Shown: positions 1-64,000, counted from the stretch's first letter. The stretch: DNA of 64,000 bases from Laetmonice hystrix (GCA_965235115.1 OZ249445.1:21638001-21702000); one strand, 5' to 3'. Notes: a model not told the origin generated them from the sequence alone. A program made the numbers and translations.

Positions 1-335
1 AGCACACCTCCATCATCCCCTTGTCCATCTTTAGTGTCCTCAATCCAGAGGTTGAGGGATTCACGAAACTGATCAAACATGAACTTGGCTTCTTTGAGGT
101 AATTGTTTGAACTCTCAATCTCCTTCGTTTCAGTCAGCACTCCATGGTACTCATTTTGTGCGTCCACAAATCGCCGGTATGCACTGTCAAACTCGTCTGC
201 CAAGGCTGTGACCTGAGGGAGATTCTGTTTTGATTCCATAAGGTTATCGGCCCGAGTTGTTAAGCGGGTGACTGCAGCCTTTGCTATTCCTCTCCTTTTC
301 CTTAACGGCTCTTGGACATTTTCTTTAGCTGCCAT
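1..335 (-). CDS. gag: ORF1 (Gag N-terminal part) of unit 0, truncated by the window edge
   Basis: Same sequence as 7371..7705; ATG at 335-333 in a GCCATGG context. Confidence 0.9.
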   Translation of the reverse strand, partial: MAAKENVQEPLRKRRGIAKAAVTRLTTRADNLMESKQNLPQVTALADEFDSAYRRFVDAQNEYHGVLTETKEIESSNNYLKEAKFMFDQFRESLNLWIEDTKDGQGDDGGV

Positions 336-430
336 GGCTGGTTTTGATCCTTGGGTAGTGAATTTGTACTTAATGTAAGCAACGGGAATTCACATGGATT
401 CACAACTAACTGGTCCTTGGCTTGACTACT

Positions 431-436
431 TTTATT
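431..436 (-). terminator. Candidate poly(A) signal AATAAA in the LTR (same offset in every LTR)
   Basis: Plus strand tttatt at 431-436, 57 nt from the inferred LTR 3' end. Confidence 0.6.
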
Positions 437-548
437 TTCCTAGCCTCAGCCTCAGAGTCTCCCCAGCAAACCGTCACTCGTACACAATGACTCGCTGACA
501 CGTACGGTACAAACTGTAAATAAAGCAAAAGATACTTGCTAGTCCAAT

Positions 549-555
549 ATTTATA
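549..555 (-). promoter_or_regulatory. Candidate TATA box (TATAAAT) in the LTR
   Basis: Plus strand atttata at 549-555, ~115 nt upstream of the AATAAA on the element strand, consistent with U3-R-U5 order. Confidence 0.5.
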
Positions 556-850
556 ACCATTAGGCTAGACGTTCCCACTACATTAACCGAAACTCGAAAC
601 CAGAAGCCCCAAACACGTGGGGGCGATAATAGGGTTATTATTGGAGACGGAGATATTTTAGAGGTTTGTGTCGAAGGAGAAGAAAAACCAGTACATATAT
701 ATTAGACCCAAGAAGACATCAATACAAACTTAGTTCAAAGAAACTCACTTCACTGGGTTCCCATGGGTGAACATTATTCTAGAGGCTAAACCCAAACTGT
801 CGAGGACCACGCTAGTGCCGTCACAATCTCCGTGTTTTTTCTCCCCTCTC

Positions 851-892
851 CTCACCAGAGGGCACCCCATATCCCTCGCTCACCAGAGGGCT
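851..892 (+). promoter_or_regulatory. Two direct-repeat CTCF-like motifs (CTCACCAGAGGGCA / CTCACCAGAGGGCT) in the LTR
   Basis: 13-bp exact direct repeat ctcaccagagggc at 851-863 and 879-891; close to the CTCF core consensus CCACCAGRKGGCRS. Confidence 0.5.
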
Positions 893-930
893 CCACCAAC
901 TGGCTTGCCGCCTAGCAGTCAAACCTAACA

Positions 931-943
931 TTTCCCGGCCCCC
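931..943 (-). other. Polypurine tract (GGGGGCCGGGAAA) directly upstream of the LTR's TGT start
   Basis: Plus strand tttcccggccccc directly follows ...cctaaca at 930; repeated at every LTR. Confidence 0.8.
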
Positions 944-1120
944 AATGCCACTATAAGGGGCATTCCTAACTAATAATAAACAAACTGCTGCCCCACACTA
1001 AACGACAAAAGATTCACCTGACAAATACATATGCCGGGTACCAAACCCATCAGGCAAAAAAAAACATCAAAAAGGTGGGACTGAACACTCGCAGAAACAC
1101 TAGTTCTGCAATTCCACTGA

Positions 1121-1242
1121 TATAGTCAAATGTTCCAATGGTATATTCAAAAGGCTCCGCTGGTACAGTCAAAAGTTCCAATGGTATATTCAAAGGCTCC
1201 GCTGGTATAGTCAAATGTTCCAATGGTATATTCAGCAACTCC
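1121..1242. repeat. 3' UTR minisatellite: ~42-bp dimer of 21-bp monomers, ~2.7 dimers (present in every unit)
   Basis: tatagtcaaatgttccaatgg / tatattcaaa(a)ggctccgctgg alternate from 1121. Confidence 0.9.
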
Positions 1243-1469
1243 AAGAGTACACCAGTCAGCTTACGGAAAAGTTTCCATAGGTTCAGTAACACAAAGAGGC
1301 AAAGTCAACCTTGGTGCAAACCAGGTACAAAGGTATACAAAAAATCTAACCACAATGGCCAGTGCTGACAATAAATTCTCCCAGTGGTTGACATGACATA
1401 GGTGTACAGGAACAAACAATACTCCTGATAATACAGTACTAAACGTTCCTGTTTGAAAACAGGTGTTCC

Positions 1470-4400
1470 TTAAGGAACAGGTGCTGCCTCAAGCAAGCAC
1501 AGCTTGGTAATCGGTCGGTCATAGAGAGACCCATTAAATCTGATCTGTGCAGAACGAACTCGGTTGTCTCGTCCGGGGTAGATCTGAGTAACCAGACCAA
1601 GAGGCCACCGGTACCGCGGCATGGCCTCATGTCGAACCAACACCAGGTCTCCAACGCGGACATCCCTTTCAATGGTTGTCCACTTTTGTCGCTCCTGCAA
1701 CAAAGGCAAGTACTCTTTGGTCCAACGTGACCAAAACACATCGGCCAGGTACTGGACCTGGCGCCAACGGCGTCGATACAGATCTTGTTTGGCAGTCAAA
1801 CAAGGTGGCAAGGTGGGCCCAGACCGCAGCAGCAGCAAATGGTTTGGGGTCAGAGGCGTGTCATCGTTGGGGTCGTCAGACAACTTGGTTATAGGTCTCC
1901 CATTTACTATGCTTTCTGTAACACAGAATAGGGTGTTGAGGGAGTCATCGTCCAACCTTTGTTGTTGTAGGAGAGCTGTCAGAATGGCCCTCACGGTGCG
2001 GATTTGCCGCTCCCACACCCCTCCCATGTGGGAGGCCCCAGGAAGGTTGAACACCCACTGGACTTCCCTCTGCAGCAGAGCTTCACAGATCTTGCCTTGG
2101 TTCCACTCCTTAAGTGCCCTCCCCAACTCTGCCTTAGCCCCAACAAAGTTGGTGCCGTTGTCCGAGCGAATGACCTTGGGCTGACCCCGACGCGCCATAA
2201 ACCGATGAAGGGCATTCAGATAGGCATCCGTGTCGAGAGAAGTAGCCACTTCCAAATGAACTGCGCGAGTTGTGAGGCAAGTAAACAGGCATCCATATCG
2301 CTTCACTTCGGTGCGCCCTCGTCTCACAATGATTGGTCCAAAATAATCAACACCCACCATGCTGAAAGGAGGGTCTCCAGGTGTAACTCTGTCGGCAGGT
2401 AGGTCAGCCATCTGCTGCCTCATGGCACATGCTCGTGCCCGTTTGCATGGGACACACTGTCCAATGACAGCTCGAACAACGGAACGTCCGCTTACAAGCC
2501 AATAACGAAGCCTTATCTCCGCTAGAACCCGCTCGACCCCAGCGTGTCCCAATTTGATGTGGTAATGGCCCACAATGAGCCGGGCCACGTGATGCTTGGC
2601 AGGCACAATCCAAGGATGCCTTCTGTCCTGTGGGAGGTCTGCTCTGGCAAGCCTGCCTCCTACACATAATACTCCCTCGGAAGAGAGAGTGGGTGCTAGT
2701 CTCTCATATCGGTTAGATCTCAGGGTGTCCTTACTGAGGGCTTGCCGCTGAATGTACCGCACTATCGCAGCTTCCGCAGCCCGCAGGTCAGCAGTAGTTA
2801 ACCACCGGTGTTCATGAGCATCAGGTGCCTTGCACCGATTCCCAAGGTAGCCCACGAAACGCAACAACCAACCAACAGACTTGCACAAGCGGTACCATGA
2901 GGAATACTTGGCTAGCAGCTGGTCAATGATAGACGCCTGGTGGTCCTCCGTGGCATACACCTGCGCATCCTTCTTCACTTCTGCTTCATCAGGTGGTAGG
3001 TTTCCCTTGACTGGAGAAACTGGCCAGGAGTCCTCAGTCCGGTAGAGGAACTCAGGCCCTATGAGCCAACGCTCAGAGTGGCATAGTTCAGTAGCGGTGA
3101 GACCACGGGAGCAATCATCAGCAGGGTTGTCTTCCGTCCTGACATGTCTCCATTGCGAGGGTTTGCTGATTTCCATGATTTGGGCCACGCGATTAGCCAC
3201 AAAGGTCTGAAAACGCTTATCTTCATTGGCTAGGTACCACAGGACAATTGTGGAGTCTGTCCAAAAAACAGACCTCAACAGAGGGATTTCTAGGTCTTCC
3301 CTCAGCATACGGTCCAACTTGACCGCTTCCACGGCTGCCGTCAGCTCAAGCCTAGGAACAGTTGTAGTTTTCATAGGCGCTAGCTTGGCCTTTGCAGCCA
3401 GAAGACCCATGTGAATGACCTGGTCAACATCCACAACACGCAAATAACTGACAGCTCCATAAGCTCCAGTCGACGCGTCGGCAAAGTGGTGCAATTGGGC
3501 TGATATCATGGGACGACTGGGCTTCAGACAGCGAGGAACAGTGAAACTGGCAATGTTTGGCAAGTCTCCAAGCCACCGTGCCCATTGCAGAGACAGTCCG
3601 TCAGGCACACTTTCGTCCCAAGTGGTAGTCAAGCGGCAGGTTTCCTGGAAGATCAGCTTGGCCCGCAGGACGAACGGGCATACGAAACCCAAGGGATCGT
3701 ATACCGAGCTAAGAGTGCTGAGAATTCCCCGTTTAGTAACAGGCTTCCTCGTTGGAGTGACGTCATAACCAAACACATCCTCCTCAAGCTTCCATAGCAC
3801 TCCCAGTGCTCTCTCGGAGGGCAAGGATCCCCGGTCCAAGTCCAGGCTGGCAATACCTTTGGCGTGATCCTCCAGGGGGATAGTCTTGAGTAGTTCTCTT
3901 GAATTGCTGATCCATTTAGCGAGCCGAAACCCGCCCGTTTTTAGCAAACCACGAAGTTGTTGTGACAATCTGATGGCAGCAGGCAGTCCATCAACTGCTT
4001 TAAGACAGTCATCAACATAAAAGTTTCGTTGGACCGTCTTGATGGCTACATCATCAAACCGGTCCCTATTGTCATCTGCACATTTTCTGAGTGCATAATT
4101 TGCCGCACTGGGTGACCACACGCCACCAAACAAATGCGCTGTCATCCTGTATGTGGCAGGTTCCTGGTTCGGGTCGTCATTCTGCCACCAGAGGAAACGG
4201 AGCATATCACGGTCTTGGGGTGTGACTCTAACCTGGTGGAACATGGATTCCACATCAGCCATGAATGCCACGGGCTCCTGCCTAAATCTTATCAAGACGC
4301 CGACTAACTTGTTGGTGAGATCAGGACCCTGATGCACTTTATCGTTTAGGGAGACTCCTCGGAACTTTGCCGCACAATCAAACACGACGCGGACTTTCTC

Positions 4401-6509
4401 CGGCTTCCGGGGGCGAGTTACTGCGTGATGGGGAATGTAGTTGACATAGCCATCAATTTCGTTATTTGAGCCGGGCGAGACTGGCTCTGCATACCCCTTC
4501 GCGACCAGTTCCCTTATCTGAGTGGTATACAAAGCTCTGAGATCCTCGTCTCGAGTTAGGCGCCTGCCTAGCAACTTGAGTCTATGTTCGGCCATAGGTC
4601 GGTTGTCTGGCATGCATGGGGGTCTGTGTTTGAAGGGGATTCCAAAGGTGTAGTGACCATCACTCAAACAAGCAGTATTGTCCCACTCCTCAAGAACTCT
4701 CCGATCAGCTACTGATTGGGGCGTGACTGAGTTTCCCATATCCTCCAGTTCCCAGAAGCGGCCGACCTGTTGCTCTAGGGCTACAAAGCACGAGTAGACT
4801 GTATGGCTCCTGGCATCTCCAATTGGTCCATTTATGGTCCATCCCAAGAGGGTTCTTGAAGCGTAGGGTTCGCCCGGTCCACCTGAACGGAGTTCCAAGG
4901 GCATGAGGGCCTGTGGTACGTCGTTACCGATTATCAAATGCACTTCGTTTGAATTGGTGTTTGGAATCTCTATGCCATCAAAGTGTTTCCACTTCCCGAG
5001 TTCCTTATCCGACACCAAGCTGGTCAGCCCAACATAGATATTTGGACGGACGTAAACTGTCCTCAGATCGATAATCGATTGTTCCTCCAGATCAGATGCC
5101 TGGAGCCGTATCGACGTGGTCTGAAGCTTTTCCTTCCCGCTTAGGGTCATTAAATCCAGGGTTTCACACCTTCGGGCCGCCCCGAGCCTGTCAGCCAGGT
5201 GATTAGAACAGAAAGTGGCGGTACTCCCTGGATCCAGAAGTGCATAGGTATCCACATAGGCTGGCGACTGTAGGCCACGGACTCTAACAGGTACAATAGG
5301 CAAGGCAATCTTGCCTTCACGGGCCCCAGCAAAGCTACAACTGACTGTCTGGGATGTGCTAGCGGAGGTCTGAGCTCTTGAAACGGCTGGTGTCGCTGCA
5401 GGGAGGACAGTGGAATCACCTGTGGTTGATTGATTTGCAGTCTGCACATCTGCAGTCCTATTGGCATTTTCCCACCTCAGGTGCAAGAAACGGCTGTGTT
5501 TAAGGTTGCACCCATCAATTCCGCAAACAAATGACCGAGGACAATCTCTACCAAAATGACCTACATTGAAGCAGTTCATACAACGACCTGTTGATCGCAC
5601 TAGACCAATACGATCCTTGATCCTCATGGCTTTGAAAGCAGGGCATGCAACAATGGAGTGTTGATCACCACAACACCAGCAGAGGACTCTGGAGCCTGGA
5701 TCCTGGGCTTGAGGGGCCATAGTAGCACCACCTGGCGCTTGGAGTGATGCTTGCACTGCAAAGCTTCCCTTGTTTCGCTGCTTCATGTCGACTTTCTTCT
5801 CAGAAGGCTTCCTCTCAGAGGTCAGATCAGCCAGTGCACCAAACACAGGATCGGAAACCTCGCTTGCTGCCAACTCAATGAACTTCACCACATCCTCCAA
5901 ACTAGGCCTTCTGTGACGCTTTATCTCCTGGTTCTTGGATAACCAACGTGTTCTCAGGCGTTGCGGGAGCTTCTCGAGAATGGTCCTTAAATTTTGTGCA
6001 CTTTCCAACTCGTGAAGATATCCCATCGTTTCCAGGGTTTCCTTGCAGCAGCGTAACACATCTGCATACTCTTGGAGGCCAACATTGCCTGTCAACTGCG
6101 AATGATTACAGATCCTTTCAATCCAAGCCTGCGAGATTATATTTTCATCCCCAAACCGCTCTTTCAAGAGTTTTCTGGCAAGGCGATATCCATCAGGAGG
6201 TGGGAGTACTTCACAACACTGGAGCAAGTTGCGAGCCTTGCCTGTGCAATATTGTAACAGAGCATTAAGTTTGACGCCATCACTAATAGTGTCTCTCTCC
6301 AAGGTGTGATCAAACCGCCTGATAAACGACCAATACTGTAACGGATTTCCATCAAAGTAGGTCAATTCTGACTTTGGCAACTGCAGACTTTCCACCAAGG
6401 ATTGGTGTTGCCGCTGTGTGGCGTCGAGCATGCTGTACAAGACATGTGAGACATCAGGAGATCCCTGGGGCCCTATTGCAGATGGGTCCCATGAACGGTG
6501 TGACCTCAT
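1470..6509 (-). CDS. pol: ORF2, 1679 aa Gag(C-terminal)-Pol polyprotein, unit 1, intact
   Basis: Gag capsid-like LPKSELTYFDGNPLQYWSF (DUF1759-like); three Cys/His motifs CWCCGDQHSIVAC, CMNCFNVGHFGRDC, CGIDGCNLKHSRFLH; protease ALLDPGS (5226-5234); RT VRVVFDCAA, ADVESMFHQV, FYVDD (4008-4019); RNase H HHFADAS, PRLEL, FWTDS, DNPADDCSRG; integrase HHCC, VDYFGP, SDNGTNF, GVWER; C-terminal WRQVQYLADVFWSRW. Domain names come from motif recognition, not a database search. Confidence 0.95.
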   Translation of the reverse strand: MRSHRSWDPSAIGPQGSPDVSHVLYSMLDATQRQHQSLVESLQLPKSELTYFDGNPLQYWSFIRRFDHTLERDTISDGVKLNALLQYCTGKARNLLQCCEVLPPPDGYRLARKLLKERFGDENIISQAWIERICNHSQLTGNVGLQEYADVLRCCKETLETMGYLHELESAQNLRTILEKLPQRLRTRWLSKNQEIKRHRRPSLEDVVKFIELAASEVSDPVFGALADLTSERKPSEKKVDMKQRNKGSFAVQASLQAPGGATMAPQAQDPGSRVLCWCCGDQHSIVACPAFKAMRIKDRIGLVRSTGRCMNCFNVGHFGRDCPRSFVCGIDGCNLKHSRFLHLRWENANRTADVQTANQSTTGDSTVLPAATPAVSRAQTSASTSQTVSCSFAGAREGKIALPIVPVRVRGLQSPAYVDTYALLDPGSTATFCSNHLADRLGAARRCETLDLMTLSGKEKLQTTSIRLQASDLEEQSIIDLRTVYVRPNIYVGLTSLVSDKELGKWKHFDGIEIPNTNSNEVHLIIGNDVPQALMPLELRSGGPGEPYASRTLLGWTINGPIGDARSHTVYSCFVALEQQVGRFWELEDMGNSVTPQSVADRRVLEEWDNTACLSDGHYTFGIPFKHRPPCMPDNRPMAEHRLKLLGRRLTRDEDLRALYTTQIRELVAKGYAEPVSPGSNNEIDGYVNYIPHHAVTRPRKPEKVRVVFDCAAKFRGVSLNDKVHQGPDLTNKLVGVLIRFRQEPVAFMADVESMFHQVRVTPQDRDMLRFLWWQNDDPNQEPATYRMTAHLFGGVWSPSAANYALRKCADDNRDRFDDVAIKTVQRNFYVDDCLKAVDGLPAAIRLSQQLRGLLKTGGFRLAKWISNSRELLKTIPLEDHAKGIASLDLDRGSLPSERALGVLWKLEEDVFGYDVTPTRKPVTKRGILSTLSSVYDPLGFVCPFVLRAKLIFQETCRLTTTWDESVPDGLSLQWARWLGDLPNIASFTVPRCLKPSRPMISAQLHHFADASTGAYGAVSYLRVVDVDQVIHMGLLAAKAKLAPMKTTTVPRLELTAAVEAVKLDRMLREDLEIPLLRSVFWTDSTIVLWYLANEDKRFQTFVANRVAQIMEISKPSQWRHVRTEDNPADDCSRGLTATELCHSERWLIGPEFLYRTEDSWPVSPVKGNLPPDEAEVKKDAQVYATEDHQASIIDQLLAKYSSWYRLCKSVGWLLRFVGYLGNRCKAPDAHEHRWLTTADLRAAEAAIVRYIQRQALSKDTLRSNRYERLAPTLSSEGVLCVGGRLARADLPQDRRHPWIVPAKHHVARLIVGHYHIKLGHAGVERVLAEIRLRYWLVSGRSVVRAVIGQCVPCKRARACAMRQQMADLPADRVTPGDPPFSMVGVDYFGPIIVRRGRTEVKRYGCLFTCLTTRAVHLEVATSLDTDAYLNALHRFMARRGQPKVIRSDNGTNFVGAKAELGRALKEWNQGKICEALLQREVQWVFNLPGASHMGGVWERQIRTVRAILTALLQQQRLDDDSLNTLFCVTESIVNGRPITKLSDDPNDDTPLTPNHLLLLRSGPTLPPCLTAKQDLYRRRWRQVQYLADVFWSRWTKEYLPLLQERQKWTTIERDVRVGDLVLVRHEAMPRYRWPLGLVTQIYPGRDNRVRSAQIRFNGSLYDRPITKLCLLEAAPVP

Positions 6510-7705
6510 TGGGTCATCAGTGGAACTGGTGTGTGGGCTTGACGGCTGCCCCCCTGGGAGTGCCTCGTGGCAGACATAGGTGTAGAGGAAGTGAGGTCCT
6601 CTCCCCTGGGGTTCCCGTCTGGTTTCTTATTCGTGGAACTTGGGTTTGGGTTTGACGGCCAGCCCCCCTGGGAGTACCTCGGGGCAGACATAGGTGTAGA
6701 TGAAATGAGGTCATCTCCCCTGGGGTTCCCGTCTGGTTTCTTATCCGTGGAACTTGGGTTTGGGTTTGACGGCCAGCCCCCCTGGGAGTACCTCGGGGCA
6801 GACATAGGTGTAGATGAAATGAGGTCATCTCCCCTGGGGTTCCCGTCAGGTTTCTTATCCATGGAACTGGGTTTTGGGTTTGACGGCCAGCCCCCCTGGG
6901 AGTACCTCGGTGCAGACATAGGTGTAGAGGAAGTGAGATCATCTCCCCTGGGGTTCCCGTCAGGTTTCTTATCCATGGAACTGAGTTTTGGGTTTGACGG
7001 CCAGCCCCCCTGGGAGTACCTCGGGGCAGACATAGGTGTAGAGGAAGTGAGGTCATCTCCCCTGGGGTTCCCGTCAGGTTTCTCTTCATCCCACTCATCC
7101 AGTTCTCGATGCATCCTTTGCAGTTCCAAATAACGTTCCCTTTGTTCCTGCTTGAATTGTATCTCCAGCTTAATTCTCTCTCGTTTCAACTTGCTCTCCC
7201 GTTCCATTAGCTCCCGCTTTAATTCGTAATCCCGGATCATCAGGTCTTCACGAACGCGCAGCTCATTCAGTTGTGCCTCGCTGTGCCGCACAGACTGTTC
7301 CAGGTCGGTCTCGGTATCCTCGGGTTCAGTCTCTTTTGCTGTATCAGCTACAACATCAAAAGGTGTGGTCAGCACACCTCCATCATCCCCTTGTCCATCT
7401 TTAGTGTCCTCAATCCAGAGGTTGAGGGATTCACGAAACTGATCAAACATGAACTTGGCTTCTTTGAGGTAATTGTTTGAACTCTCAATCTCCTTCGTTT
7501 CAGTCAGCACTCCATGGTACTCATTTTGTGCGTCCACAAATCGCCGGTATGCACTGTCAAACTCGTCTGCCAAGGCTGTGACCTGAGGGAGATTCTGTTT
7601 TGATTCCATAAGGTTATCGGCCCGAGTTGTTAAGCGGGTGACTGCAGCCTTTGCTATTCCTCTCCTTTTCCTTAACGGCTCTTGGACATTTTCTTTAGCT
7701 GCCAT
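6506..7705 (-). CDS. gag: ORF1, 399 aa Gag N-terminal region (helical/coiled-coil plus 38-aa repeats), unit 1
   Basis: Strong Kozak GCCATGG 39 nt after the LTR; RKRRGIAKAAVTRL helical start; E/K/R-rich coiled coil; stop overlaps the ORF2 ATG (ATGA). Confidence 0.85.
   Translation of the reverse strand: MAAKENVQEPLRKRRGIAKAAVTRLTTRADNLMESKQNLPQVTALADEFDSAYRRFVDAQNEYHGVLTETKEIESSNNYLKEAKFMFDQFRESLNLWIEDTKDGQGDDGGVLTTPFDVVADTAKETEPEDTETDLEQSVRHSEAQLNELRVREDLMIRDYELKRELMERESKLKRERIKLEIQFKQEQRERYLELQRMHRELDEWDEEKPDGNPRGDDLTSSTPMSAPRYSQGGWPSNPKLSSMDKKPDGNPRGDDLTSSTPMSAPRYSQGGWPSNPKPSSMDKKPDGNPRGDDLISSTPMSAPRYSQGGWPSNPNPSSTDKKPDGNPRGDDLISSTPMSAPRYSQGGWPSNPNPSSTNKKPDGNPRGEDLTSSTPMSATRHSQGGSRQAHTPVPLMTQ
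6515..7085 (-). repeat. Five tandem 114-bp (38-aa) repeats inside ORF1; equivalents at ~13885-14455, 21255-21825, 28615-29185, 35976-36546, 43346-43916, 50716-51286, 58076-58646
   Basis: ctcccctggggttcccgtc recurs at 6601, 6715, 6829, 6943, 7057; peptide KPDGNPRGDDL(T/I)SSTPMSAPRYSQGGWPSNPxxSSxDK. Confidence 0.95.
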
Positions 7706-7743
7706 GGCTGGTTTTGATCCTTGGGTAGTGAATTTGTACTTAA

Positions 7744-8300
7744 TGTAAGCAACGGGAATTCACATGGATTCACAACTAACTGGTCCTTGGCTTGACTACT
7801 TTTATTTTCCTAGCCTCAGCCTCAGAGTCTCCCCAGCAAACCGTCACTCGTACACAATGACTCGCTGACACGTACGGTACAAACTGTAAATAAAGCAAAA
7901 GATACTTGCTAGTCCAATATTTATAACCATTAGGCTAGACGTTCCCACTACATTAACCGAAACTCGAAACCAGAAGCCCCAAACACGTGGGGGCGATAAT
8001 AGGGTTATTATTGGAGACGGAGATATTTTAGAGGTTTGTGTCGAAGGAGAAGAAAAACCAGTACATATATATTAGACCCAAGAAGACATCAATACAAACT
8101 TAGTTCAAAGAAACTCACTTCACTGGGTTCCCATGGGTGAACATTATTCTAGAGGCTAAACCCAAACTGTCGAGGACCACGCTAGTGCCGTCACAATCTC
8201 CGTGTTTTTTCTCCCCTCTCCTCACCAGAGGGCACCCCATATCCCTCGCTCACCAGAGGGCTCCACCAACTGGCTTGCCGCCTAGCAGTCAAACCTAACA
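7744..8300 (-). repeat. LTR copy 1 (shared by units 1 and 2)
   Basis: Same sequence as 374..930. Confidence 0.8.
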
Positions 8301-8839
8301 TTTCCCGGCCCCCAATGCCACTATAAGGGGCATTCCTAACTAATAATAAACAAACTGCTGCCCCACACTAAACGACAAAAGATTCACCTGACAAATACAT
8401 ATGCCGGGTACCAAACCCATCAGGCAAAAAAAAACATCAAAAAGGTGGGACTGAACACTCGCAGAAACACTAGTTCTGCAATTCCACTGATATAGTCAAA
8501 TGTTCCAATGGTATATTCAAAAGGCTCCGCTGGTACAGTCAAAAGTTCCAATGGTATATTCAAAGGCTCCGCTGGTATAGTCAAATGTTCCAATGGTATA
8601 TTCAGCAACTCCAAGAGTACACCAGTCAGCTTACGGAAAAGTTTCCATAGGTTCAGTAACACAAAGAGGCAAAGTCAACCTTGGTGCAAACCAGGTACAA
8701 AGGTATACAAAAAATCTAACCACAATGGCCAGTGCTGACAATAAATTCTCCCAGTGGTTGACATGACATAGGTGTACAGGAACAAACAATACTCCTGATA
8801 ATACAGTACTAAACGTTCCTGTTTGAAAACAGGTGTTCC

Positions 8840-11800
8840 TTAAGGAACAGGTGCTGCCTCAAGCAAGCACAGCTTGGTAATCGGTCGGTCATAGAGAGAC
8901 CCATTAAATCTGATCTGTGCAGAACGAACTCGGTTGTCTCGTCCGGGGTAGATCTGAGTAACCAGACCAAGAGGCCACCGGTACCGCGGCATGGCCTCAT
9001 GTCGAACCAACACCAGGTCTCCAACGCGGACATCCCTTTCAATGGTTGTCCACTTTTGTCGCTCCTGCAACAAAGGCAAGTACTCTTTGGTCCAACGTGA
9101 CCAAAACACATCGGCCAGGTACTGGACCTGGCGCCAACGGCGTCGATACAGATCTTGTTTGGCAGTCAAACAAGGTGGCAAGGTGGGCCCAGACCGCAGC
9201 AGCAGCAAATGGTTTGGGGTCAGAGGCGTGTCATCGTTGGGGTCGTCAGACAACTTGGTTATAGGTCTCCCATTTACTATGCTTTCTGTAACACAGAATA
9301 GGGTGTTGAGGGAGTCATCGTCCAACCTTTGTTGTTGTAGGAGAGCTGTCAGAATGGCCCTCACGGTGCGGATTTGCCGCTCCCACACCCCTCCCATGTG
9401 GGAGGCCCCAGGAGGGTTGAACACCCACTGGACTTCCCTCTGCAGCAGAGCTTCACAGATCTTGCCTTGGTTCCACTCCTTAAGTGCCCTCCCCAACTCT
9501 GCCTTAGCCCCAACAAAGTTGGTGCCGTTGTCCGAGCGAATGACCTTGGGCTGACCCCGACGCGCCATAAACCGATGAAGGGCATTCAGATAGGCATCCG
9601 TGTCGAGAGAAGTAGCCACTTCCAAATGAACTGCGCGAGTTGTGAGGCAAGTAAACAGGCATCCATATCGCTTCACTTCGGTGCGCCCTCGTCTCACAAT
9701 GATTGGTCCAAAATAATCAACACCCACCATGCTGAAAGGAGGGTCTCCAGGTGTAACTCTGTCGGCAGGTAGGTCAGCCATCTGCTGCCTCATGGCACAT
9801 GCTCGTGCCCGTTTGCATGGGACACACTGTCCAATGACAGCTCGAACAACGGAACGTCCGCTTACAAGCCAATAACGAAGCCTTATCTCCGCTAGAACCC
9901 GCTCGACCCCAGCGTGTCCCAATTTGATGTGGTAATGGCCCACAATGAGCCGGGCCACGTGATGCTTGGCAGGCACAATCCAAGGATGCCTTCTGTCCTG
10001 TGGGAGGTCTGCTCTGGCAAGCCTGCCTCCTACACATAATACTCCCTCGGAAGAGAGAGTGGGTGCTAGTCTCTCATATCGGTTAGATCTCAGGGTGTCC
10101 TTACTGAGGGCTTGCCGCTGAATGTACCGCACTATCGCAGCTTCCGCAGCCCGCAGGTCAGCAGTAGTTAACCACCGGTGTTCATGAGCATCAGGTGCCT
10201 TGCACCGATTCCCAAGGTAGCCCACGAAACGCAACAACCAACCAACAGACTTGCACAAGCGGTACCATGAGGAATACTTGGCTAGCAGCTGGTCAATGAT
10301 AGACGCCTGGTGGTCCTCCGTGGCATACACCTGCGCATCCTTCTTCACTTCTGCTTCATCAGGTGGTAGGTTTCCCTTGACTGGAGAAACTGGCCAGGAG
10401 TCCTCAGTCCGGTAGAGGAACTCAGGCCCTATGAGCCAACGCTCAGAGTGGCATAGTTCAGTAGCGGTGAGACCACGGGAGCAATCATCAGCAGGGTTGT
10501 CTTCCGTCCTGACATGTCTCCATTGCGAGGGTTTGCTGATTTCCATGATTTGGGCCACGCGATTAGCCACAAAGGTCTGAAAACGCTTATCTTCATTGGC
10601 TAGGTACCACAGGACAATTGTGGAGTCTGTCCAAAAAACAGACCTCAACAGAGGGATTTCTAGGTCTTCCCTCAGCATACGGTCCAACTTGACCGCTTCC
10701 ACGGCTGCCGTCAGCTCAAGCCTAGGAACAGTTGTAGTTTTCATAGGCGCTAGCTTGGCCTTTGCAGCCAGAAGACCCATGTGAATGACCTGGTCAACAT
10801 CCACAACACGCAAATAACTGACAGCTCCATAAGCTCCAGTCGACGCGTCGGCAAAGTGGTGCAATTGGGCTGATATCATGGGACGACTGGGCTTCAGACA
10901 GCGAGGAACAGTGAAACTGGCAATGTTTGGCAAGTCTCCAAGCCACCGTGCCCATTGCAGAGACAGTCCGTCAGGCACACTTTCGTCCCAAGTGGTAGTC
11001 AAGCGGCAGGTTTCCTGGAAGATCAGTTTGGCCCGCAGGACGAACGGGCATACGAAACCCAAGGGATCGTATACCGAGCTAAGAGTGCTGAGAATTCCCC
11101 GTTTAGTAACAGGCTTCCTCGTTGGAGTGACGTCATAACCAAACACATCCTCCTCAAGCTTCCATAGCACTCCCAGTGCTCTCTCGGAGGGCAAGGATCC
11201 CCGGTCCAAGTCCAGGCTGGCAATACCTTTGGCGTGATCCTCCAGGGGGATAGTCTTGAGTAGTTCTCTTGAATTGCTGATCCATTTAGCGAGCCGAAAC
11301 CCGCCCGTTTTTAGCAAACCACGAAGTTGTTGTGACAATCTGATGGCAGCAGGCAGTCCATCAACTGCTTTAAGACAGTCATCAACATAAAAGTTTCGTT
11401 GGACCGTCTTGATGGCTACATCATCAAACCGGTCCCTATTGTCATCTGCACATTTTCTGAGTGCATAATTTGCCGCACTGGGTGACCACACGCCACCAAA
11501 CAAATGCGCTGTCATCCTGTATGTGGCAGGTTCCTGGTTCGGGTCGTCATTCTGCCACCAGAGGAAACGGAGCATATCACGGTCTTGGGGTGTGACTCTA
11601 ACCTGGTGGAACATGGATTCCACATCAGCCATGAATGCCACGGGCTCCTGCCTAAATCTTATCAAGACGCCGACTAACTTGTTGGTGAGATCAGGACCCT
11701 GATGCACTTTATCGTTTAGGGAGACTCCTCGGAACTTTGCCGCACAATCAAACACGACGCGGACTTTCTCCGGCTTCCGGGGGCAAGTTACTGCGTGATG

Positions 11801-13879: not shown

Positions 13880-15075
13880 TGGGTCATCAGTGGAACTGGT
13901 GTGTGGGCTTGACGGCTGCCCCCCTGGGAGTGCCTCGTGGCAGACATAGGTGTAGAGGAAGTGAGGTCCTCTCCCCTGGGGTTCCCGTCTGGTTTCTTAT
14001 TCGTGGAACTTGGGTTTGGGTTTGACGGCCAGCCCCCCTGGGAGTACCTCGGGGCAGACATAGGTGTAGATGAAATGAGGTCATCTCCCCTGGGGTTCCC
14101 GTCTGGTTTCTTATCCGTGGAACTTGGGTTTGGGTTTGACGGCCAGCCCCCCTGGGAGTACCTCGGGGCAGACATAGGTGTAGATGAAATGAGGTCATCT
14201 CCCCTGGGGTTCCCGTCAGGTTTCTTATCCATGGAACTGGGTTTTGGGTTTGACGGCCAGCCCCCCTGGGAGTACCTCGGTGCAGACATAGGTGTAGAGG
14301 AAGTGAGATCATCTCCCCTGGGGTTCCCGTCAGGTTTCTTATCCATGGAACTGAGTTTTGGGTTTGACGGCCAGCCCCCCTGGGAGTACCTCGGGGCAGA
14401 CATAGGTGTAGAGGAAGTGAGGTCATCTCCCCTGGGGTTCCCGTCAGGTTTCTCTTCATCCCACTCATCCAGTTCTCGATGCATCCTTTGCAGTTCCAAA
14501 TAACGTTCCCTTTGTTCCTGCTTGAATTGTATCTCCAGCTTAATTCTCTCTCGTTTCAACTTGCTCTCCCGTTCCATTAGCTCCCGCTTTAATTCGTAAT
14601 CCCGGATCATCAGGTCTTCACGAACGCGCAGCTCATTCAGTTGTGCCTCGCTGTGCCGCACAGACTGTTCCAGGTCGGTCTCGGTATCCTCGGGTTCAGT
14701 CTCTTTTGCTGTATCAGCTACAACATCAACAGGTGTGGTCAGCACACCTCCATCATCCCCTTGTCCATCTTTAGTGTCCTCAATCCAGAGGTTGAGGGAT
14801 TCACGAAACTGATCAAACATGAACTTGGCTTCTTTGAGGTAATTGTTTGAACTCTCAATCTCCTTCGTTTCAGTCAGCACTCCATGGTACTCATTTTGTG
14901 CGTCCACAAATCGCCGGTATGCACTGTCAAACTCGTCTGCCAAGGCTGTGACCTGAGGGAGATTCTGTTTTGATTCCATAAGGTTATCGGCCCGAGTTGT
15001 TAAGCGGGTGACTGCAGCCTTTGCTATTCCTCTCCTTTTCCTTAACGGCTCTTGGACATTTTCTTTAGCTGCCAT
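13876..15075 (-). CDS. gag: ORF1 Gag N-terminal region, unit 2
   Basis: 399-aa copy of the unit 1 ORF1. Confidence 0.85.
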   Translation of the reverse strand: MAAKENVQEPLRKRRGIAKAAVTRLTTRADNLMESKQNLPQVTALADEFDSAYRRFVDAQNEYHGVLTETKEIESSNNYLKEAKFMFDQFRESLNLWIEDTKDGQGDDGGVLTTPVDVVADTAKETEPEDTETDLEQSVRHSEAQLNELRVREDLMIRDYELKRELMERESKLKRERIKLEIQFKQEQRERYLELQRMHRELDEWDEEKPDGNPRGDDLTSSTPMSAPRYSQGGWPSNPKLSSMDKKPDGNPRGDDLTSSTPMSAPRYSQGGWPSNPKPSSMDKKPDGNPRGDDLISSTPMSAPRYSQGGWPSNPNPSSTDKKPDGNPRGDDLISSTPMSAPRYSQGGWPSNPNPSSTNKKPDGNPRGEDLTSSTPMSATRHSQGGSRQAHTPVPLMTQ

Positions 15076-15113
15076 GGCTGGTTTTGATCCTTGGGTAGTG
15101 AATTTGTACTTAA

Positions 15114-51944: not shown

Positions 51945-52501
51945 TGTAAGCAACGGGAATTCACATGGATTCACAACTAACTGGTCCTTGGCTTGACTAC
52001 TTTTATTTTCCTAGCCTCAGCCTCAGAGTCTCCCCAGCAAACCGTCACTCGTACACAATGACTCGCTGACACGTACGGTACAAACTGTAAATAAAGCAAA
52101 AGATACTTGCTAGTCCAATATTTATAACCATTAGGCTAGACGTTCCCACTACATTAACCGAAACTCGAAACCAGAAGCCCCAAACACGTGGGGGCGATAA
52201 TAGGGTTATTATTGGAGACGGAGATATTTTAGAGGTTTGTGTCGAAGGAGAAGAAAAACCAGTACATATATATTAGACCCAAGAAGACATCAATACAAAC
52301 TTAGTTCAAAGAAACTCACTTCACTGGGTTCCCATGGGTGAACATTATTCTAGAGGCTAAACCCAAACTGTCGAGGACCACGCTAGTGCCGTCACAATCT
52401 CCGTGTTTTTTCTCCCCTCTCCTCACCAGAGGGCACCCCATATCCCTCGCTCACCAGAGGGCTCCACCAACTGGCTTGCCGCCTAGCAGTCAAACCTAAC
52501 A
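51945..52501 (-). repeat. LTR copy 7
   Basis: Same sequence as 374..930. Confidence 0.8.
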
Positions 52502-59266: not shown

Positions 59267-59304
59267 GGCTGGTTTTGATCCTTGGGTAGTGAATTTGTAC
59301 TTAA

Positions 59305-59861
59305 TGTAAGCAACGGGAATTCACATGGATTCACAACTAACTGGTCCTTGGCTTGACTACTTTTATTTTCCTAGCCTCAGCCTCAGAGTCTCCCCAGCAA
59401 ACCGTCACTCGTACACAATGACTCGCTGACACGTACGGTACAAACTGTAAATAAAGCAAAAGATACTTGCTAGTCCAATATTTATAACCATTAGGCTAGA
59501 CGTTCCCACTACATTAACCGAAACTCGAAACCAGAAGCCCCAAACACGTGGGGGCGATAATAGGGTTATTATTGGAGACGGAGATATTTTAGAGGTTTGT
59601 GTCGAAGGAGAAGAAAAACCAGTACATATATATTAGACCCAAGAAGACATCAATACAAACTTAGTTCAAAGAAACTCACTTCACTGGGTTCCCATGGGTG
59701 AACATTATTCTAGAGGCTAAACCCAAACTGTCGAGGACCACGCTAGTGCCGTCACAATCTCCGTGTTTTTTCTCCCCTCTCCTCACCAGAGGGCACCCCA
59801 TATCCCTCGCTCACCAGAGGGCTCCACCAACTGGCTTGCCGCCTAGCAGTCAAACCTAACA
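59305..59861 (-). repeat. LTR copy 8
   Basis: Same sequence as 374..930. Confidence 0.8.
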
Positions 59862-60400
59862 TTTCCCGGCCCCCAATGCCACTATAAGGGGCATTCCTAA
59901 CTAATAATAAACAAACTGCTGCCCCACACTAAACGACAAAAGATTCACCTGACAAATACATATGCCGGGTACCAAACCCATCAGGCAAAAAAAAACATCA
60001 AAAAGGTGGGACTGAACACTCGCAGAAACACTAGTTCTGCAATTCCACTGATATAGTCAAATGTTCCAATGGTATATTCAAAAGGCTCCGCTGGTACAGT
60101 CAAAAGTTCCAATGGTATATTCAAAGGCTCCGCTGGTATAGTCAAATGTTCCAATGGTATATTCAGCAACTCCAAGAGTACACCAGTCAGCTTACGGAAA
60201 AGTTTCCATAGGTTCAGTAACACAAAGAGGCAAAGTCAACCTTGGTGCAAACCAGGTACAAAGGTATACAAAAAATCTAACCACAATGGCCAGTGCTGAC
60301 AATAAATTCTCCCAGTGGTTGACATGACATAGGTGTACAGGAACAAACAATACTCCTGATAATACAGTACTAAACGTTCCTGTTTGAAAACAGGTGTTCC

Positions 60401-63400
60401 TTAAGGAACAGGTGCTGCCTCAAGCAAGCACAGCTTGGTAATCGGTCGGTCATAGAGAGACCCATTAAATCTGATCTGTGCAGAACGAACTCGGTTGTCT
60501 CGTCCGGGGTAGATCTGAGTAACCAGACCAAGAGGCCACCGGTACCGCGGCATGGCCTCATGTCGAACCAACACCAGGTCTCCAACGCGGACATCCCTTT
60601 CAATGGTTGTCCACTTTTGTCGCTCCTGCAACAAAGGCAAGTACTCTTTGGTCCAACGTGACCAAAACACATCGGCCAGGTACTGGACCTGGCGCCAACG
60701 GCGTCGATACAGATCTTGTTTGGCAGTCAAACAAGGTGGCAAGGTGGGCCCAGACCGCAGCAGCAGCAAATGGTTTGGGGTCAGAGGCGTGTCATCGTTG
60801 GGGTCGTCAGACAACTTGGTTATAGGTCTCCCATTTACTATGCTTTCTGTAACACAGAATAGGGTGTTGAGGGAGTCATCGTCCAACCTTTGTTGTTGTA
60901 GGAGAGCTGTCAGAATGGCCCTCACGGTGCGGATTTGCCGCTCCCACACCCCTCCCATGTGGGAGGCCCCAGGAGGGTTGAACACCCACTGGACTTCCCT
61001 CTGCAGCAGAGCTTCACAGATCTTGCCTTGGTTCCACTCCTTAAGTGCCCTCCCCAACTCTGCCTTAGCCCCAACAAAGTTGGTGCCGTTGTCCGAGCGA
61101 ATGACCTTGGGCTGACCCCGACGCGCCATAAACCGATGAAGGGCATTCAGATAGGCATCCGTGTCGAGAGAAGTAGCCACTTCCAAATGAACTGCGCGAG
61201 TTGTGAGGCAAGTAAACAGGCATCCATATCGCTTCACTTCGGTGCGCCCTCGTCTCACAATGATTGGTCCAAAATAATCAACACCCACCATGCTGAAAGG
61301 AGGGTCTCCAGGTGTAACTCTGTCGGCAGGTAGGTCAGCCATCTGCTGCCTCATGGCACATGCTCGTGCCCGTTTGCATGGGACACACTGTCCAATGACA
61401 GCTCGAACAACGGAACGTCCGCTTACAAGCCAATAACGAAGCCTTATCTCCGCTAGAACCCGCTCGACCCCAGCGTGTCCCAATTTGATGTGGTAATGGC
61501 CCACAATGAGCCGGGCCACGTGATGCTTGGCAGGCACAATCCAAGGATGCCTTCTGTCCTGTGGGAGGTCTGCTCTGGCAAGCCTGCCTCCTACACATAA
61601 TACTCCCTCGGAAGAGAGAGTGGGTGCTAGTCTCTCATATCGGTTAGATCTCAGGGTGTCCTTACTGAGGGCTTGCCGCTGAATGTACCGCACTATCGCA
61701 GCTTCCGCAGCCCGCAGGTCAGCAGTAGTTAACCACCGGTGTTCATGAGCATCAGGTGCCTTGCACCGATTCCCAAGGTAGCCCACGAAACGCAACAACC
61801 AACCAACAGACTTGCACAAGCGGTACCATGAGGAATACTTGGCTAGCAGCTGGTCAATGATAGACGCCTGGTGGTCCTCCGTGGCATACACCTGCGCATC
61901 CTTCTTCACTTCTGCTTCATCAGGTGGTAGGTTTCCCTTGACTGGAGAAACTGGCCAGGAGTCCTCAGTCCGGTAGAGGAACTCAGGCCCTATGAGCCAA
62001 CGCTCAGAGTGGCATAGTTCCCATAGCGGTGAGACCACGGGAGCAATCATCAGCAGGGTTGTCTTCCGTCCTGACATGTCTCCATTGCGAGGGTTTGCTG
62101 ATTTCCATGATTTGGGCCACGCGATTAGCCACAAAGGTCTGAAAACGCTTATCTTCATTGGCTAGGTACCACAGGACAATTGTGGAGTCTGTCCAAAAAA
62201 CAGACCTCAACAGAGGGATTTCTAGGTCTTCCCTCAGCATACGGTCCAACTTGACCGCTTCCACGGCTGCCGTCAGCTCAAGCCTAGGAACAGTTGTAGT
62301 TTTCATAGGCGCTAGCTTGGCCTTTGCAGCCAGAAGACCCATGTGAATGACCTGGTCAACATCCACAACACGCAAATAACTGACAGCTCCATAAGCTCCA
62401 GTCGACGCGTCGGCAAAGTGGTGCAATTGGGCTGATATCGTGGGACGACTGGGCTTCAGACAGCGAGGAACAGTGAAACTGGCAATGTTTGGCAAGTCTC
62501 CAAGCCACCGTGCCCATTGCAGAGACAGTCCGTCAGGCACACTTTCGTCCCAAGTGGTAGTCAAGCGGCAGGTTTCCTGGAAGATCAGCTTGGCCCGCAG
62601 GACGAACGGGCATACGAAACCCAAGGGATCGTATACCGAGCTAAGAGTGCTGAGAATTCCCCGTTTAGTAACAGGCTTCCTCATTGGAGTGACGTCATAA
62701 CCAAACACATCCTCCTCAAGCTTCCATAGCACTCCCAGTGCTCTCTCGGAGGGCAAGGATCCCCGGTCCAAGTCCAGGCTGGCAATACCTTTGGCGTGAT
62801 CCTCCAGGGGGATAGTCTTGAGTAGTTCTCTTGAATTGCTGATCCATTTAGCGAGCCGAAACCCGCCCGTTTTTAGCAAACCACGAAGTTGTTGTGACAA
62901 TCTGATGGCAGCAGGCAGTCCATCAACTGCTTTAAGACAGTCATCAACATAAAAGTTTCGTTGGACCGTCTTGATGGCTACATCATCAAACCGGTCCCTA
63001 TTGTCATCTGCACATTTTCTGAGCGCATAATTTGCCGCACTGGGTGACCACACGCCACCAAACAAATGCGCTGTCATCCTGTATGTGGCAGGTTCCTGGT
63101 TCGGGTCGTCATTCTGCCACCAGAGGAAACGGAGCATATCACGGTCTTGGGGTGTGACTCTAACCTGGTGGAACATGGATTCCACATCAGCCATGAATGC
63201 CACGGGCTCCTGCCTAAATCTTATCAAGACGCCGACTAACTTGTTGGTGAGATCAGGACCCTGATGCACTTTATCGTTTAGGGAGACTCCTCGGAACTTT
63301 GCCGCACAATCAAACACGACGCGGACTTTCTCCGGCTTCCGGGGGTGAGTTACTGCGTGATGGGGAATGTAGTTGACATAGCCATCAATTTCGTCATTTG

Positions 63401-64000
63401 AGCCGGGCGAGACTGGCTCTGCATACCCCTTCGCGACCAGTTCCCTTATCTGAGTGGTATACAAAGCTCTGAGATCCTCGTCTCGAGTTAGGCGCCTGCC
63501 TAGCAACTTGAGTCTATGTTCGGCCATAGGTCGGTTGTCTGGCATGCATGGGGGTCTGTGTTTGAAGGGGATTCCAAAGGTGTAGTGACCATCACTCAAA
63601 CAAGCAGTATTGTCCCACTCCTCAAGAACTCTCCGATCAGCTACTGATTGGGGCGTGACTGAGTTTCCCATATCCTCCAGTTCCCAGAAGCGGCCGACCT
63701 GTTGCTCTAGGGCTACAAAGCACGAGTAGACTGTATGGCTCCTGGCATCTCCAATTGGTCCATTTATGGTCCATCCCAAGAGGGTTCTTGAAGCGTAGGG
63801 TTCGCCCGGTCCACCTGAACGGAGTTCCAAGGGCATGAGGGCCTGTGGTACGTCGTTACCGATTATCAAATGCACTTCGTTTGAATTGGTGTTTGGAATC
63901 TCTATGCCATCAAAGTGTTTCCACTTCCCGAGTTCCTTATCCGACACCAAGCTGGTCAGCCCAACATAGATATTTGGACGGACGTAAACTGTCCTCAGAT
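60401..64000 (-). pseudogene. pol: ORF2 of unit 9, partial, frameshifted by the +1 indel in the RNase H region
   Basis: ttcccatagc allele as in unit 5; lacks the -10 bp indel; the frame is open to the window edge, so the ATG at 63950 is internal. Confidence 0.9.

What the first reader, a model, noticed from the sequence alone, without database searches (positions are those of the whole stretch)
1..64000. Megasatellite of a full-length, largely intact Bel/Pao retrotransposon with single shared LTRs
Seen: at least 8.7 near-identical copies in strict LTR-internal-LTR-internal order. There is one LTR per junction, with no LTR-LTR doublets, no spacer DNA and no target-site duplications between units. 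The 7,370-bp period equals one LTR plus one internal region, the length of a 1-LTR circle. Known: ordinary integrase-mediated insertion gives dispersed two-LTR copies with TSDs; shared-LTR tandems arise by unequal LTR-LTR recombination or by circle/rolling-circle amplification; retrotransposon-derived tandem repeats have been described in plant centromeres (e.g. maize CRM-derived arrays). Inference: a single insertion was amplified very recently at the DNA level into a satellite of >64 kb. It could be a nascent centromeric/heterochromatic array, a high-dosage source locus, or a one-strand piRNA source.
Basis: partly seen in the sequence, partly recalled or inferred. Interest (0 to 1): 0.88.

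Follow-up and report, generated by a model that had tools for sequence, protein, structure and literature searches.

The report
Shared-LTR tandem array of Bel/Pao
The whole 64-kb window is about nine head-to-tail, 99.9%-identical copies of one 7.4-kb Bel/Pao retrotransposon, each joined to the next by a single shared LTR; this kind of structure is already known, and this is an unusually long, full-length example in an animal genome.

Summary
The window is 8.68 units with a period of 7,370 bp (7,360 and 7,361 in three units). Each unit is one 557-bp LTR plus one 6,813-bp internal region. All nine LTRs are 100% identical, and there are no LTR doublets and no Ns. Pfam confirms a Bel/Pao gag-pol on the minus strand.

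"Largely intact" is only partly right. In every unit the polyprotein, a single ORF in the closest relative, is split into two overlapping frames. Units 4, 5 and 8 also carry frameshifts in pol.

Two results support DNA-level amplification of one founder copy:
- All window copies share letters that differ from the family's commonest form in the same individual's reads.
- Derived variants recur at a four-unit (29.5 kb) spacing (p≈0.02), the footprint of block duplication by unequal exchange.

Substitutions between units look unselected.

Shared-LTR tandems are already described in Drosophila, plants and kangaroo centromeres. This is therefore a new, unusually long member of a known kind.

I could not test the array ends, a flanking TSD, the true copy number, expression, or the centromere and piRNA ideas. 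No genome, raw reads or RNA runs were available. An assembly artefact is unlikely but not excluded.

A first-stage note (s1-319919) reports a possible small shared-LTR array elsewhere in this genome; I did not check it.

The parts
1..64000 (-). Tandem array, 8.68 units of 7,370 bp (units 4 and 8: 7,360; unit 5: 7,361). It runs off both ends of the window.
374..930 (-). LTR copy 1 of 9 (557 bp, TGTTAGG...GCTTACA on the minus strand)
7744..8300 (-). LTR copy 2. Its edges are defined by contig branch points and a depth step in reads. TATA-like box near 7925 and AATAAA near 7805. It serves as 3' LTR for the unit above it and 5' LTR for the unit below it.
15114..15670 (-). LTR copy 3
22484..23040 (-). 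LTR copy 4
29844..30400 (-). LTR copy 5
37205..37761 (-). LTR copy 6
44575..45131 (-). LTR copy 7
51945..52501 (-). LTR copy 8
59305..59861 (-). LTR copy 9
931..7743 (-). Internal region of unit 1 (6,813 bp). The same layout repeats at 8301-15113, 15671-22483, 23041-29843, 30401-37204, 37762-44574, 45132-51944 and 52502-59304.
1470..6509 (-). 1,679-aa ORF: gag (DUF1759, Zn knuckle), protease, RT (YVDD), Peptidase_A17 region, integrase (HHCC, core), DUF5641. The frame is open in units 1, 2, 3, 6 and 7.
6506..7705 (-). 399-aa upstream ORF. It corresponds to the N-terminal ~250 aa of the single polyprotein of the closest relative. It contains the 38-aa repeats. The gag-pol frame lies at -1 relative to it.
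6509..6626 (-). Overlap of the two frames, where the polyprotein is split in every unit. The C-run at 6549-6554 differs in length from the read-derived contigs.
6516..7083 (-). 5 x 114-bp in-frame tandem repeat inside the N-terminal gag part; recurs in every unit
1113..1234 (-). 2.9 x 42-bp tandem repeat in the 3' UTR between the pol stop and the LTR; recurs in every unit
8301..8313 (-). Purine-rich tract (GGGGGCCGGGAAA) abutting the LTR start; candidate polypurine tract
25766..26015 (-). Overlap of the two open stretches in pol of unit 4. The frame is broken here by a 10-bp deletion. The same break is in units 5 (33127-33376) and 8 (55227-55476).
32546..32700 (-). Second frame break in pol of unit 5 (1-bp indel with two adjacent substitutions). 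The same variant is in partial unit 9 near 62020-62023.
8483..30582 (-). Units 2-4. They form a near-duplicate block with units 6-8 (37944-60043), at 1, 2 and 1 differences per unit pair. This is the four-unit higher-order register.

Best explanation
This is a real chromosomal tandem array of a Bel/Pao LTR retrotransposon in which neighbouring copies share one LTR. A single founder insertion already carried a split gag-pol frame and two private LTR letters. It first became a two-unit, three-LTR structure by out-of-register recombination between its own LTRs on sister chromatids or homologues. It then grew, and is still being reshuffled, by unequal exchange between whole units. That growth includes at least one duplication of a block of about four units (29.5 kb).

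Each LTR can serve as terminator for the unit upstream and promoter for the unit downstream. In cis the array is therefore equivalent to N proviruses with N+1 LTRs. The copies behave as unselected DNA, not as products of repeated retrotransposition.

Shown: the structure, the family, the shared private changes, the higher-order pattern and the unselected substitutions. Inferred: the LTR-LTR first step, the chromosomal reality of all nine units, and transcription.
For: - **Structure.** Period 7,370 bp, 8.68 units, about 99.9% identity. There are nine identical 557-bp LTRs, one per unit. The LTR edges were set independently from read-graph branch points and a depth step.
- **Family.** Bel/Pao domains are present in the canonical order.
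- **One founder.** Every unit has the same split of a polyprotein that is one ORF in the 71% relative P0001. Every unit has the same letters at 7913 and 8195, where contigs from the same sample show only another letter. Only 1 of 9 homopolymers of 6 or more bases disagrees with the reads, so the split is not a general assembly weakness.
- **DNA-level growth.** Units 2-3-4 versus 6-7-8 differ by 1, 2 and 1 events, against about 5 between neighbours. Pairs u1/u5 and u5/u9 also share derived variants. Permutation p=0.019, binomial p=0.022.
- **No selection between units.** 8-9 of 11 coding substitutions are nonsynonymous, and there are two frameshifting indels.
- **Not a library artefact of one circle.** Variants shared by subsets of units rule out rolling-circle copying of a single molecule during library preparation.
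- **Position.** The window lies more than 20 Mb into a chromosome-scale piece.
- **Precedent.** LTR-LTR ectopic recombination is the published route to such tandems (PMC5932611, PMC11899658).
Against: - No native long read spanning two or more units could be examined. Only de Bruijn contigs from one sample were available, and these cannot tell a tandem junction from an ordinary element.
- I have not seen the array ends or a flanking TSD, and I could not compare read depth with single-copy depth.
- The shared length difference in a homopolymer could still be a systematic consensus error.
- The array-private variants were not seen as separate contigs, because contigs drop minor variants. Their presence in the reads is therefore unconfirmed.
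- The higher-order signal rests on few variants (p≈0.02).
- The first step, LTR-LTR exchange versus insertion of a multimer, leaves no distinguishing trace in the window.
Confidence: 0.6

Rival explanations
1. The multimer was made in one step by the retroelement's own replication, then integrated or recombined into the chromosome. Candidate routes are rolling-circle copying of a 1-LTR circle, read-through transcription across a 1-LTR circle or weak terminator, or homologous recombination of cDNA molecules into a resident LTR, as in yeast Ty1 multimers (own knowledge). Unequal exchange only remodelled it later.
For: The unit length equals that of a 1-LTR circle, 557 + 6,813 bp. Units are extremely uniform. 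PMC11899658 and Fig. 1B of PMC5932611 treat this route as open for LTR tandems. Other family members in the same genome appear to have the undivided form and could supply proteins in trans.
Against: A one-step product would start with identical units and then collect mainly private changes. Here more than half of the variant classes are shared by non-adjacent units in a four-unit register. At least part of the growth was therefore block duplication of chromosomal DNA. The founder has a split polyprotein. There is no evidence of circles.
Confidence: 0.17
2. It is an assembly artefact. The true locus has fewer units, or is an ordinary two-LTR element, an episomal circle or two haplotypes. The assembler walked the LTR-internal cycle too many times, or concatenated allelic copies.
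For: No spanning reads could be checked. Only contigs from a single sample hold the sequence. Arrays of 7.4-kb units at 99.9% identity are hard to assemble. The near-identity at lag 4 could in principle be allelic copies placed in tandem. All units share a homopolymer length that the read contigs do not show.
Against: - There are no Ns or gaps in 64 kb.
- Units carry an ordered, non-random set of SNPs and indels, and the lag-4 pairs are not identical.
- The array extends beyond both window ends, so a simple 4+4 haplotype join does not fit.
- 8 of 9 long homopolymers agree with the reads.
- K-mer depth of the element is high, about 520 internal and about 870 or more in the LTR, and the commonest between-unit letters match the contigs.
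- The window sits deep inside a chromosome-scale piece.
Confidence: 0.13
3. The array is a selected functional locus: a young centromeric or heterochromatic satellite, a one-strand piRNA source, or a high-dosage master locus for the family. Under this view it is more than a neutral by-product of recombination.
For: All units lie on one strand, and each unit keeps an identical LTR with TATA and poly(A) signals. Tandem LTR-retroelement arrays occur in kangaroo centromeres (cited in PMC11899658).
Against: Nothing in the window speaks for function. Substitutions between units are unselected and three units have fresh frameshifts. No RNA run is on record. The contigs of run X4, the only data that might be RNA, differ from the array copies by 1-3%. 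The chromosomal position relative to a centromere is unknown.
Confidence: 0.08

Closest known systems
Shared-LTR tandem LTR retrotransposons formed by ectopic LTR-LTR recombination (Drosophila survey, McGurk & Barbash 2018, PMC5932611; Ke & Voytas 1997 as cited there)
   Same: Head-to-tail elements share one LTR, with no target-site copy in the junction. They are proposed as seeds that unequal exchange can expand into satellites.
   Different: Those are mostly dimers or low-copy tandems inferred from short-read junctions. Here at least nine LTRs and eight full 6.8-kb internal regions are assembled contiguously, with a higher-order four-unit register.
Tandem LTR-RT structures in plants (rice TLI1/TLI2, IDENTAM survey; PMC11899658)
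   Same: LTRs alternate with internal regions that contain coding domains. Units are highly identical, and the structure is interpreted as stemming from one insertion.
   Different: The plant cases are Ty3/gypsy or Ty1/copia. Here the element is an animal Bel/Pao, the array exceeds 64 kb, and the TSD was not observable.
Long tandem arrays of Cassandra TRIM elements (PMC7215508)
   Same: Many units (12 or more) in LTR-internal-LTR order with single LTRs between them.
   Different: Cassandra is a non-coding miniature element. Twelve units span about 6 kb, and it carries a Pol III 5S promoter in its LTR. Here each unit is a 7.4-kb gag-pol element.
Retroelement tandem arrays in kangaroo centromeres (as cited in PMC11899658) and CRM-derived tandem repeats in maize (PMC3648361, title and abstract only)
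   Same: Retroelement sequence is turned into tandem repeats.
   Different: Those are tied to centromeres by cytology or ChIP. No such evidence exists here, and the maize repeats are fragments, not full-length units.
Ty1 multimeric arrays in yeast
   Same: Tandem full-length elements are separated by single LTRs.
   Different: They form by cDNA recombination when integration is impaired, in a laboratory setting. Whether cDNA was involved here is unknown.

Membership tests
Bel/Pao LTR retrotransposon | pol with Pao-type domains in the order protease - RT - RNase H region (Peptidase_A17) - integrase | tested here: met
   Pfam hits: Asp_protease_2 at residues 406-485 (weak), RVT_1 743-863, Peptidase_A17 925-1086 (E=6.6e-45), Integrase_H2C2 1308-1359, rve 1403-1458. 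YVDD, HHCC and integrase core motifs are present.
Bel/Pao LTR retrotransposon | gag of the DUF1759 type and C-terminal DUF5641, as in other members | tested here: met
   DUF1759 at residues 52-197 and DUF5641 at 1580-1673. 941 homologues carry the same Pfam set, from echinoderms, fishes, nemerteans, priapulids, molluscs and corals.
Bel/Pao LTR retrotransposon | Long terminal repeats with TG...CA ends and a polypurine tract before the 3' LTR | tested here: met
   The 557-bp LTR reads TGTTAGG...GCTTACA. Its edges come from read-graph branch points at 7744 and 8301, and GGGGGCCGGGAAA abuts the LTR start.
Bel/Pao LTR retrotransposon | tRNA-type primer binding site just after the 5' LTR | tested here: inconclusive
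   Only 38 nt lie between the LTR end (7744) and the ATG (7705). No TGG start occurs there except the one overlapping the ATG. No tRNAs of this genome were available.
Bel/Pao LTR retrotransposon | Target-site duplication flanking the insertion | not testable with these tools
   The array runs off both ends of the window and no genome is held.
Shared-LTR tandem LTR-RT array | Strict alternation of LTR and internal region, same orientation, exactly one LTR between internal regions | tested here: met
   Nine LTR hits spaced 7,370/7,360/7,361 bp apart, with no other LTR-like sequence in the window.
Shared-LTR tandem LTR-RT array | No flanking DNA or target-site copy inside the junctions | tested here: met
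   LTR (557) + internal (6,813) = the period. The internal region abuts the LTR edges defined from the reads, to within 1 nt at 8301.
Shared-LTR tandem LTR-RT array | One TSD around the whole array (single insertion) | not testable with these tools
   The array ends lie outside the window. The single-founder origin is supported only indirectly, by array-wide private changes.
Shared-LTR tandem LTR-RT array | Physical support from single molecules spanning two or more units | not testable with these tools
   Only k-mer contigs were served, and the single read-laying run is used.
Satellite DNA with higher-order repeat structure | Multi-unit blocks more alike than neighbouring units | tested here: met
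   Lag-4 pairs differ by 1, 2 and 1 events against about 5 for neighbours. Permutation p=0.019, binomial p=0.022. The sample is small.
Centromeric satellite / piRNA cluster | CENP-A or heterochromatin marks, or small RNAs mapping to the locus | not testable with these tools
   No chromatin or small-RNA data were available, and no RNA run is on record.

The most novel reading that the evidence does not exclude
The array is an early-stage satellite caught in the act. A coding-size retroelement, still with identical promoters in every unit, is being expanded by block duplication into a long array that extends well beyond this window. It has acquired, or is acquiring, a chromosomal role such as heterochromatin or centromere seed, or a one-strand small-RNA source against its own still-active family.
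Probability: 0.08. Interest if true: 0.75.

Novelty: new member of a known kind. Interest (0 to 1): 0.45.

Why it matters
Models of satellite birth hold that transposable-element dimers are the seeds, and that unequal exchange turns them into arrays. Most documented shared-LTR tandems are dimers or trimers, or are made of miniature elements. An array of at least nine full-length 7.4-kb units, with only about 0.07% divergence and a visible four-unit higher-order register, would be a rare snapshot of the expansion phase in an animal. It would also be a concrete locus on which copy-number polymorphism, silencing and the LTR-LTR versus multimer-insertion question could be tested with long reads. 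There is a practical warning too: counting such units as independent young insertions would inflate estimates of recent Bel/Pao activity.

Tried and rejected
- **Whole-genome access.** The genome search 'own' and the fetch from genomes both report that no genome is held. I therefore have no array ends, TSD, dispersed copies or centromere context.
- **Exact-protein look-up.** The 1,679-aa product is not on record.
- **Sequencing runs.** Only four runs from one sample hold the element, all served as contigs, and none is on record as RNA. Depth could not be normalised to single-copy sequence, so I give no copy-number estimate.
- **tRNA scan.** No tRNA genes in the unit, and no PBS could be assigned.
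- **Relatives' context.** L001 (52% relative) is an ordinary two-LTR copy, but its 3' LTR is cut by the contig end, so it did not help with the PBS. The P0014 locus had no DNA.
- **Programmed -1 frameshift** as the reason for the two frames: rejected as the main reading. The split lies inside the N-terminal gag part, not at a gag/pol boundary. The closest relative is one ORF, and the read contigs differ from the assembly exactly there.
- **General homopolymer error of the assembly:** made unlikely.
- **Library rolling-circle artefact from one circle:** rejected because subsets of units share variants.
- **Earlier notes of this scan.** Nothing near the window and nothing on this family.
- **Literature.** No report found of long full-length Bel/Pao arrays.


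Full report
**1. What is there**

The window contains no Ns and has an even base composition. A count of offsets between repeated 20-mers gives one dominant period, 7,370 bp, with minor periods of 7,360 and 7,361. Tandem Repeats Finder finds two small nested repeats, 42 bp x 2.9 and 114 bp x 5, each recurring at that spacing across the window.

I cut the window at a fixed landmark into eight complete units and two partial ones. The unit lengths are 7370, 7370, 7370, 7360, 7361, 7370, 7370 and 7360. In a 7,371-column alignment the complete units differ at only about 12 variant events, or 1 to 11 events per pair.

**2. What the unit is**

All long open frames lie on the minus strand. The 1,679-aa ORF (1470-6509 in unit 1) matches, in order:
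- DUF1759 (gag)
- an aspartic protease (weak)
- RVT_1
- Peptidase_A17, the Pao signature (E=6.6e-45)
- Integrase_H2C2
- rve
- DUF5641

A gag zinc knuckle, the RT motif YVDD, the integrase HHCC motif and integrase core motifs are all present. A database search gives 941 homologues with the same domain set from many animal phyla. The best is only 71% identical, so the family itself is not in that collection. The Bel/Pao assignment stands.

**3. Where the LTR is**

In a shared-LTR array the LTR cannot be found as a repeat within a unit, so I used the reads. Contigs from three runs of one sample cover the element at k-mer depth of about 520-650 in the internal region. Depth rises to about 870-1,370 between 7744 and 8301. 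Unitigs break with 30-nt overlaps exactly at 7744 and 8301, and a contig leaves the element beyond 8301 into sequence that is absent from the window.

On the minus strand this gives a 557-bp LTR reading TGTTAGG...GCTTACA. It is directly preceded by GGGGGCCGGGAAA and contains a TATA-like box and an AATAAA. BLAST of this LTR against the window finds exactly nine copies, all 100% identical, one per unit.

557 + 6,813 = 7,370, so there is no room for a second LTR, a spacer or a target-site copy, to within 1 nt at the 8301 edge. I could not assign a tRNA-type primer binding site in the 38 nt between the LTR and the first ATG.

**4. Coding state**

"Largely intact" is too generous. The closest relative, P0001, is one ORF of 1,947 aa. 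Its first ~250 residues align with the 399-aa ORF upstream of gag-pol (6506-7705), and its residues from 269 on align with the 1,679-aa ORF. A 52% relative on contig L001 is likewise a single 1,993-aa ORF between two LTRs.

In every window unit the polyprotein is instead in two overlapping frames. The switch lies within 6509-6626. Units 4, 5 and 8 also have a 10-bp deletion that breaks pol. Unit 5 and the partial unit 9 have a further 1-bp indel. Five of the eight complete units therefore keep the 1,679-aa frame, and none has the undivided form.

**5. One founder**

At three places the contigs from the same individual show only a form that differs from all window copies: LTR positions 7913 and 8195, and the length of the C-run at 6549-6554, inside the frame overlap. 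Contigs keep the commoner branch. The window's form is therefore the minority in that genome, or, for the homopolymer, possibly a consensus error.

The laid stretch holds nine homopolymers of 6 or more bases, including an A9, and only this one disagrees. I therefore favour a real, array-wide private change. Changes shared by all units but not by the bulk of the family are what one founder copy amplified in place would leave.

The LTR-to-internal depth ratio is about 1.5-1.7, and branch sequences are absent from the window. Other copies, solo LTRs or fragments of the family therefore exist elsewhere.

**6. How it grew**

Derived variants are not mostly private to single units.
- Units 2 and 6 share two variants.
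- Units 4 and 8 share the deletion and a linked SNP.
- Units 1 and 5 share one variant.
- Units 5 and 9 share a complex indel.

All four pairs are four units apart. Units 2-3-4 differ from 6-7-8 by 1, 2 and 1 events, against about 5 for neighbouring units. A permutation of unit order gives p=0.019, and a binomial on doubleton classes gives p=0.022. This higher-order register of about 29.5 kb needs duplication of a multi-unit block of chromosomal DNA, and retrotransposition or single-unit cDNA addition cannot produce it.

Of 11 coding substitutions between units, 8-9 are nonsynonymous, and 7 of 10 substitutions are transitions. That fits unselected DNA copies.

The most economical history is an LTR-LTR out-of-register exchange in one insertion, followed by unequal exchange between units. 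This is the route drawn in Fig. 1A of PMC5932611. A one-step multimer from a 1-LTR circle, read-through transcript or cDNA recombination remains possible as the first event (discussion of PMC11899658). It cannot be the whole story.

**7. Could it be an artefact?**

I could not look at single molecules. Only de Bruijn contigs from one sample were served, and they cannot tell a tandem junction from the junctions of an ordinary element.

Against an artefact:
- The 64 kb are gap-free.
- The units carry an ordered set of SNPs and indels.
- The lag-4 pairs are similar but not identical.
- The array runs off both window ends.
- The commonest between-unit letters agree with the contigs.
- The window lies more than 20 Mb into a chromosome-scale piece.

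Variants shared by subsets of units exclude rolling-circle copying of one circle during library preparation. I put an artefact at about 0.13.

**8. Comparison with what is known**

Shared-LTR tandems are a described class:
- Most LTR families of Drosophila melanogaster can be detected as tandems, attributed mainly to LTR-LTR recombination (PMC5932611).
- In plants, 28 such loci were selected in the rice reference, 266 were found in a 76-accession pangenome, and others were found in Arabidopsis, almond and cotton. They are highly polymorphic in unit number (PMC11899658).
- Cassandra TRIM arrays reach 12 or more units but span only about 6 kb (PMC7215508).
- PMC11899658 cites kangaroo centromeres as another case.

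I found no report of a long array of full-length Bel/Pao elements. The window therefore holds a new, unusually long and full-length member of a known kind, not a new kind.

**9. What remains open**

I could not test the array length beyond the window, the TSD, the true copy number, expression, or the centromere, piRNA and source-locus ideas.

Run X4, of unknown kind, covers the 3' UTR plus LTR 10-25 times more deeply than gag-pol. Its contigs differ from the array copies by 1-3%. If it is RNA, it reports other family members and not this array.

A first-stage note (s1-319919) reports a possible small TRIM-like shared-LTR array elsewhere in this genome. I did not check it.

Noticed in passing
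window 6516-7083 and the same place in every unit: Five in-frame 114-bp (38-aa) repeats in the N-terminal gag part (KKPDGNPRGDDLTSSTPMSAPRYSQGGWPSNP...). The 71% relative P0001 has a single copy of the motif, so this internal expansion is specific to this family.
   Followed up: partly
window 1113-1234 and the same place in every unit: 2.9 copies of a 42-bp repeat in the 3' UTR between the pol stop and the LTR. This region is known in plant elements as a source of satellites (Macas 2009, as listed in PMC5932611).
   Followed up: no
window 7850-8450 (run X4): One small run of unknown kind covers the 3' UTR plus LTR at depth 245-350 but gag-pol at 0-35. Its contigs are 1-3% different from the window copies and show several internal deletions. 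This is either 3'-biased RNA of other family members or many 3' fragments.
   Followed up: no
window 9377-9532 (integrase core, unit 2): About 150 bp here continue into at least two other sequence contexts in the read contigs (four different loose ends, none present in the window). Another element family or gene shares this segment almost exactly.
   Followed up: partly
window 7705-7743: Only 38 nt separate the LTR end from the first ATG, and no ordinary TGG-starting primer binding site is present there. The priming mode of this element is unassigned.
   Followed up: partly
window 46516 and 48616 (unit 7 coordinates; variants in units 4/5 and 2/6): Two of the between-unit substitutions are CGC>TGC changes at CpG, and transitions dominate (7 of 10). 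This hints at deamination of methylated repeat DNA, but the numbers are too small to test.
   Followed up: no
L001:7147-14279: A 52% relative from another assembly is an ordinary two-LTR copy. Its LTR starts lie 6,739 bp apart, it has a single 1,993-aa ORF, and the upstream neighbours are unrelated. The single shared LTRs seen here are thus not found in every relative.
   Followed up: partly
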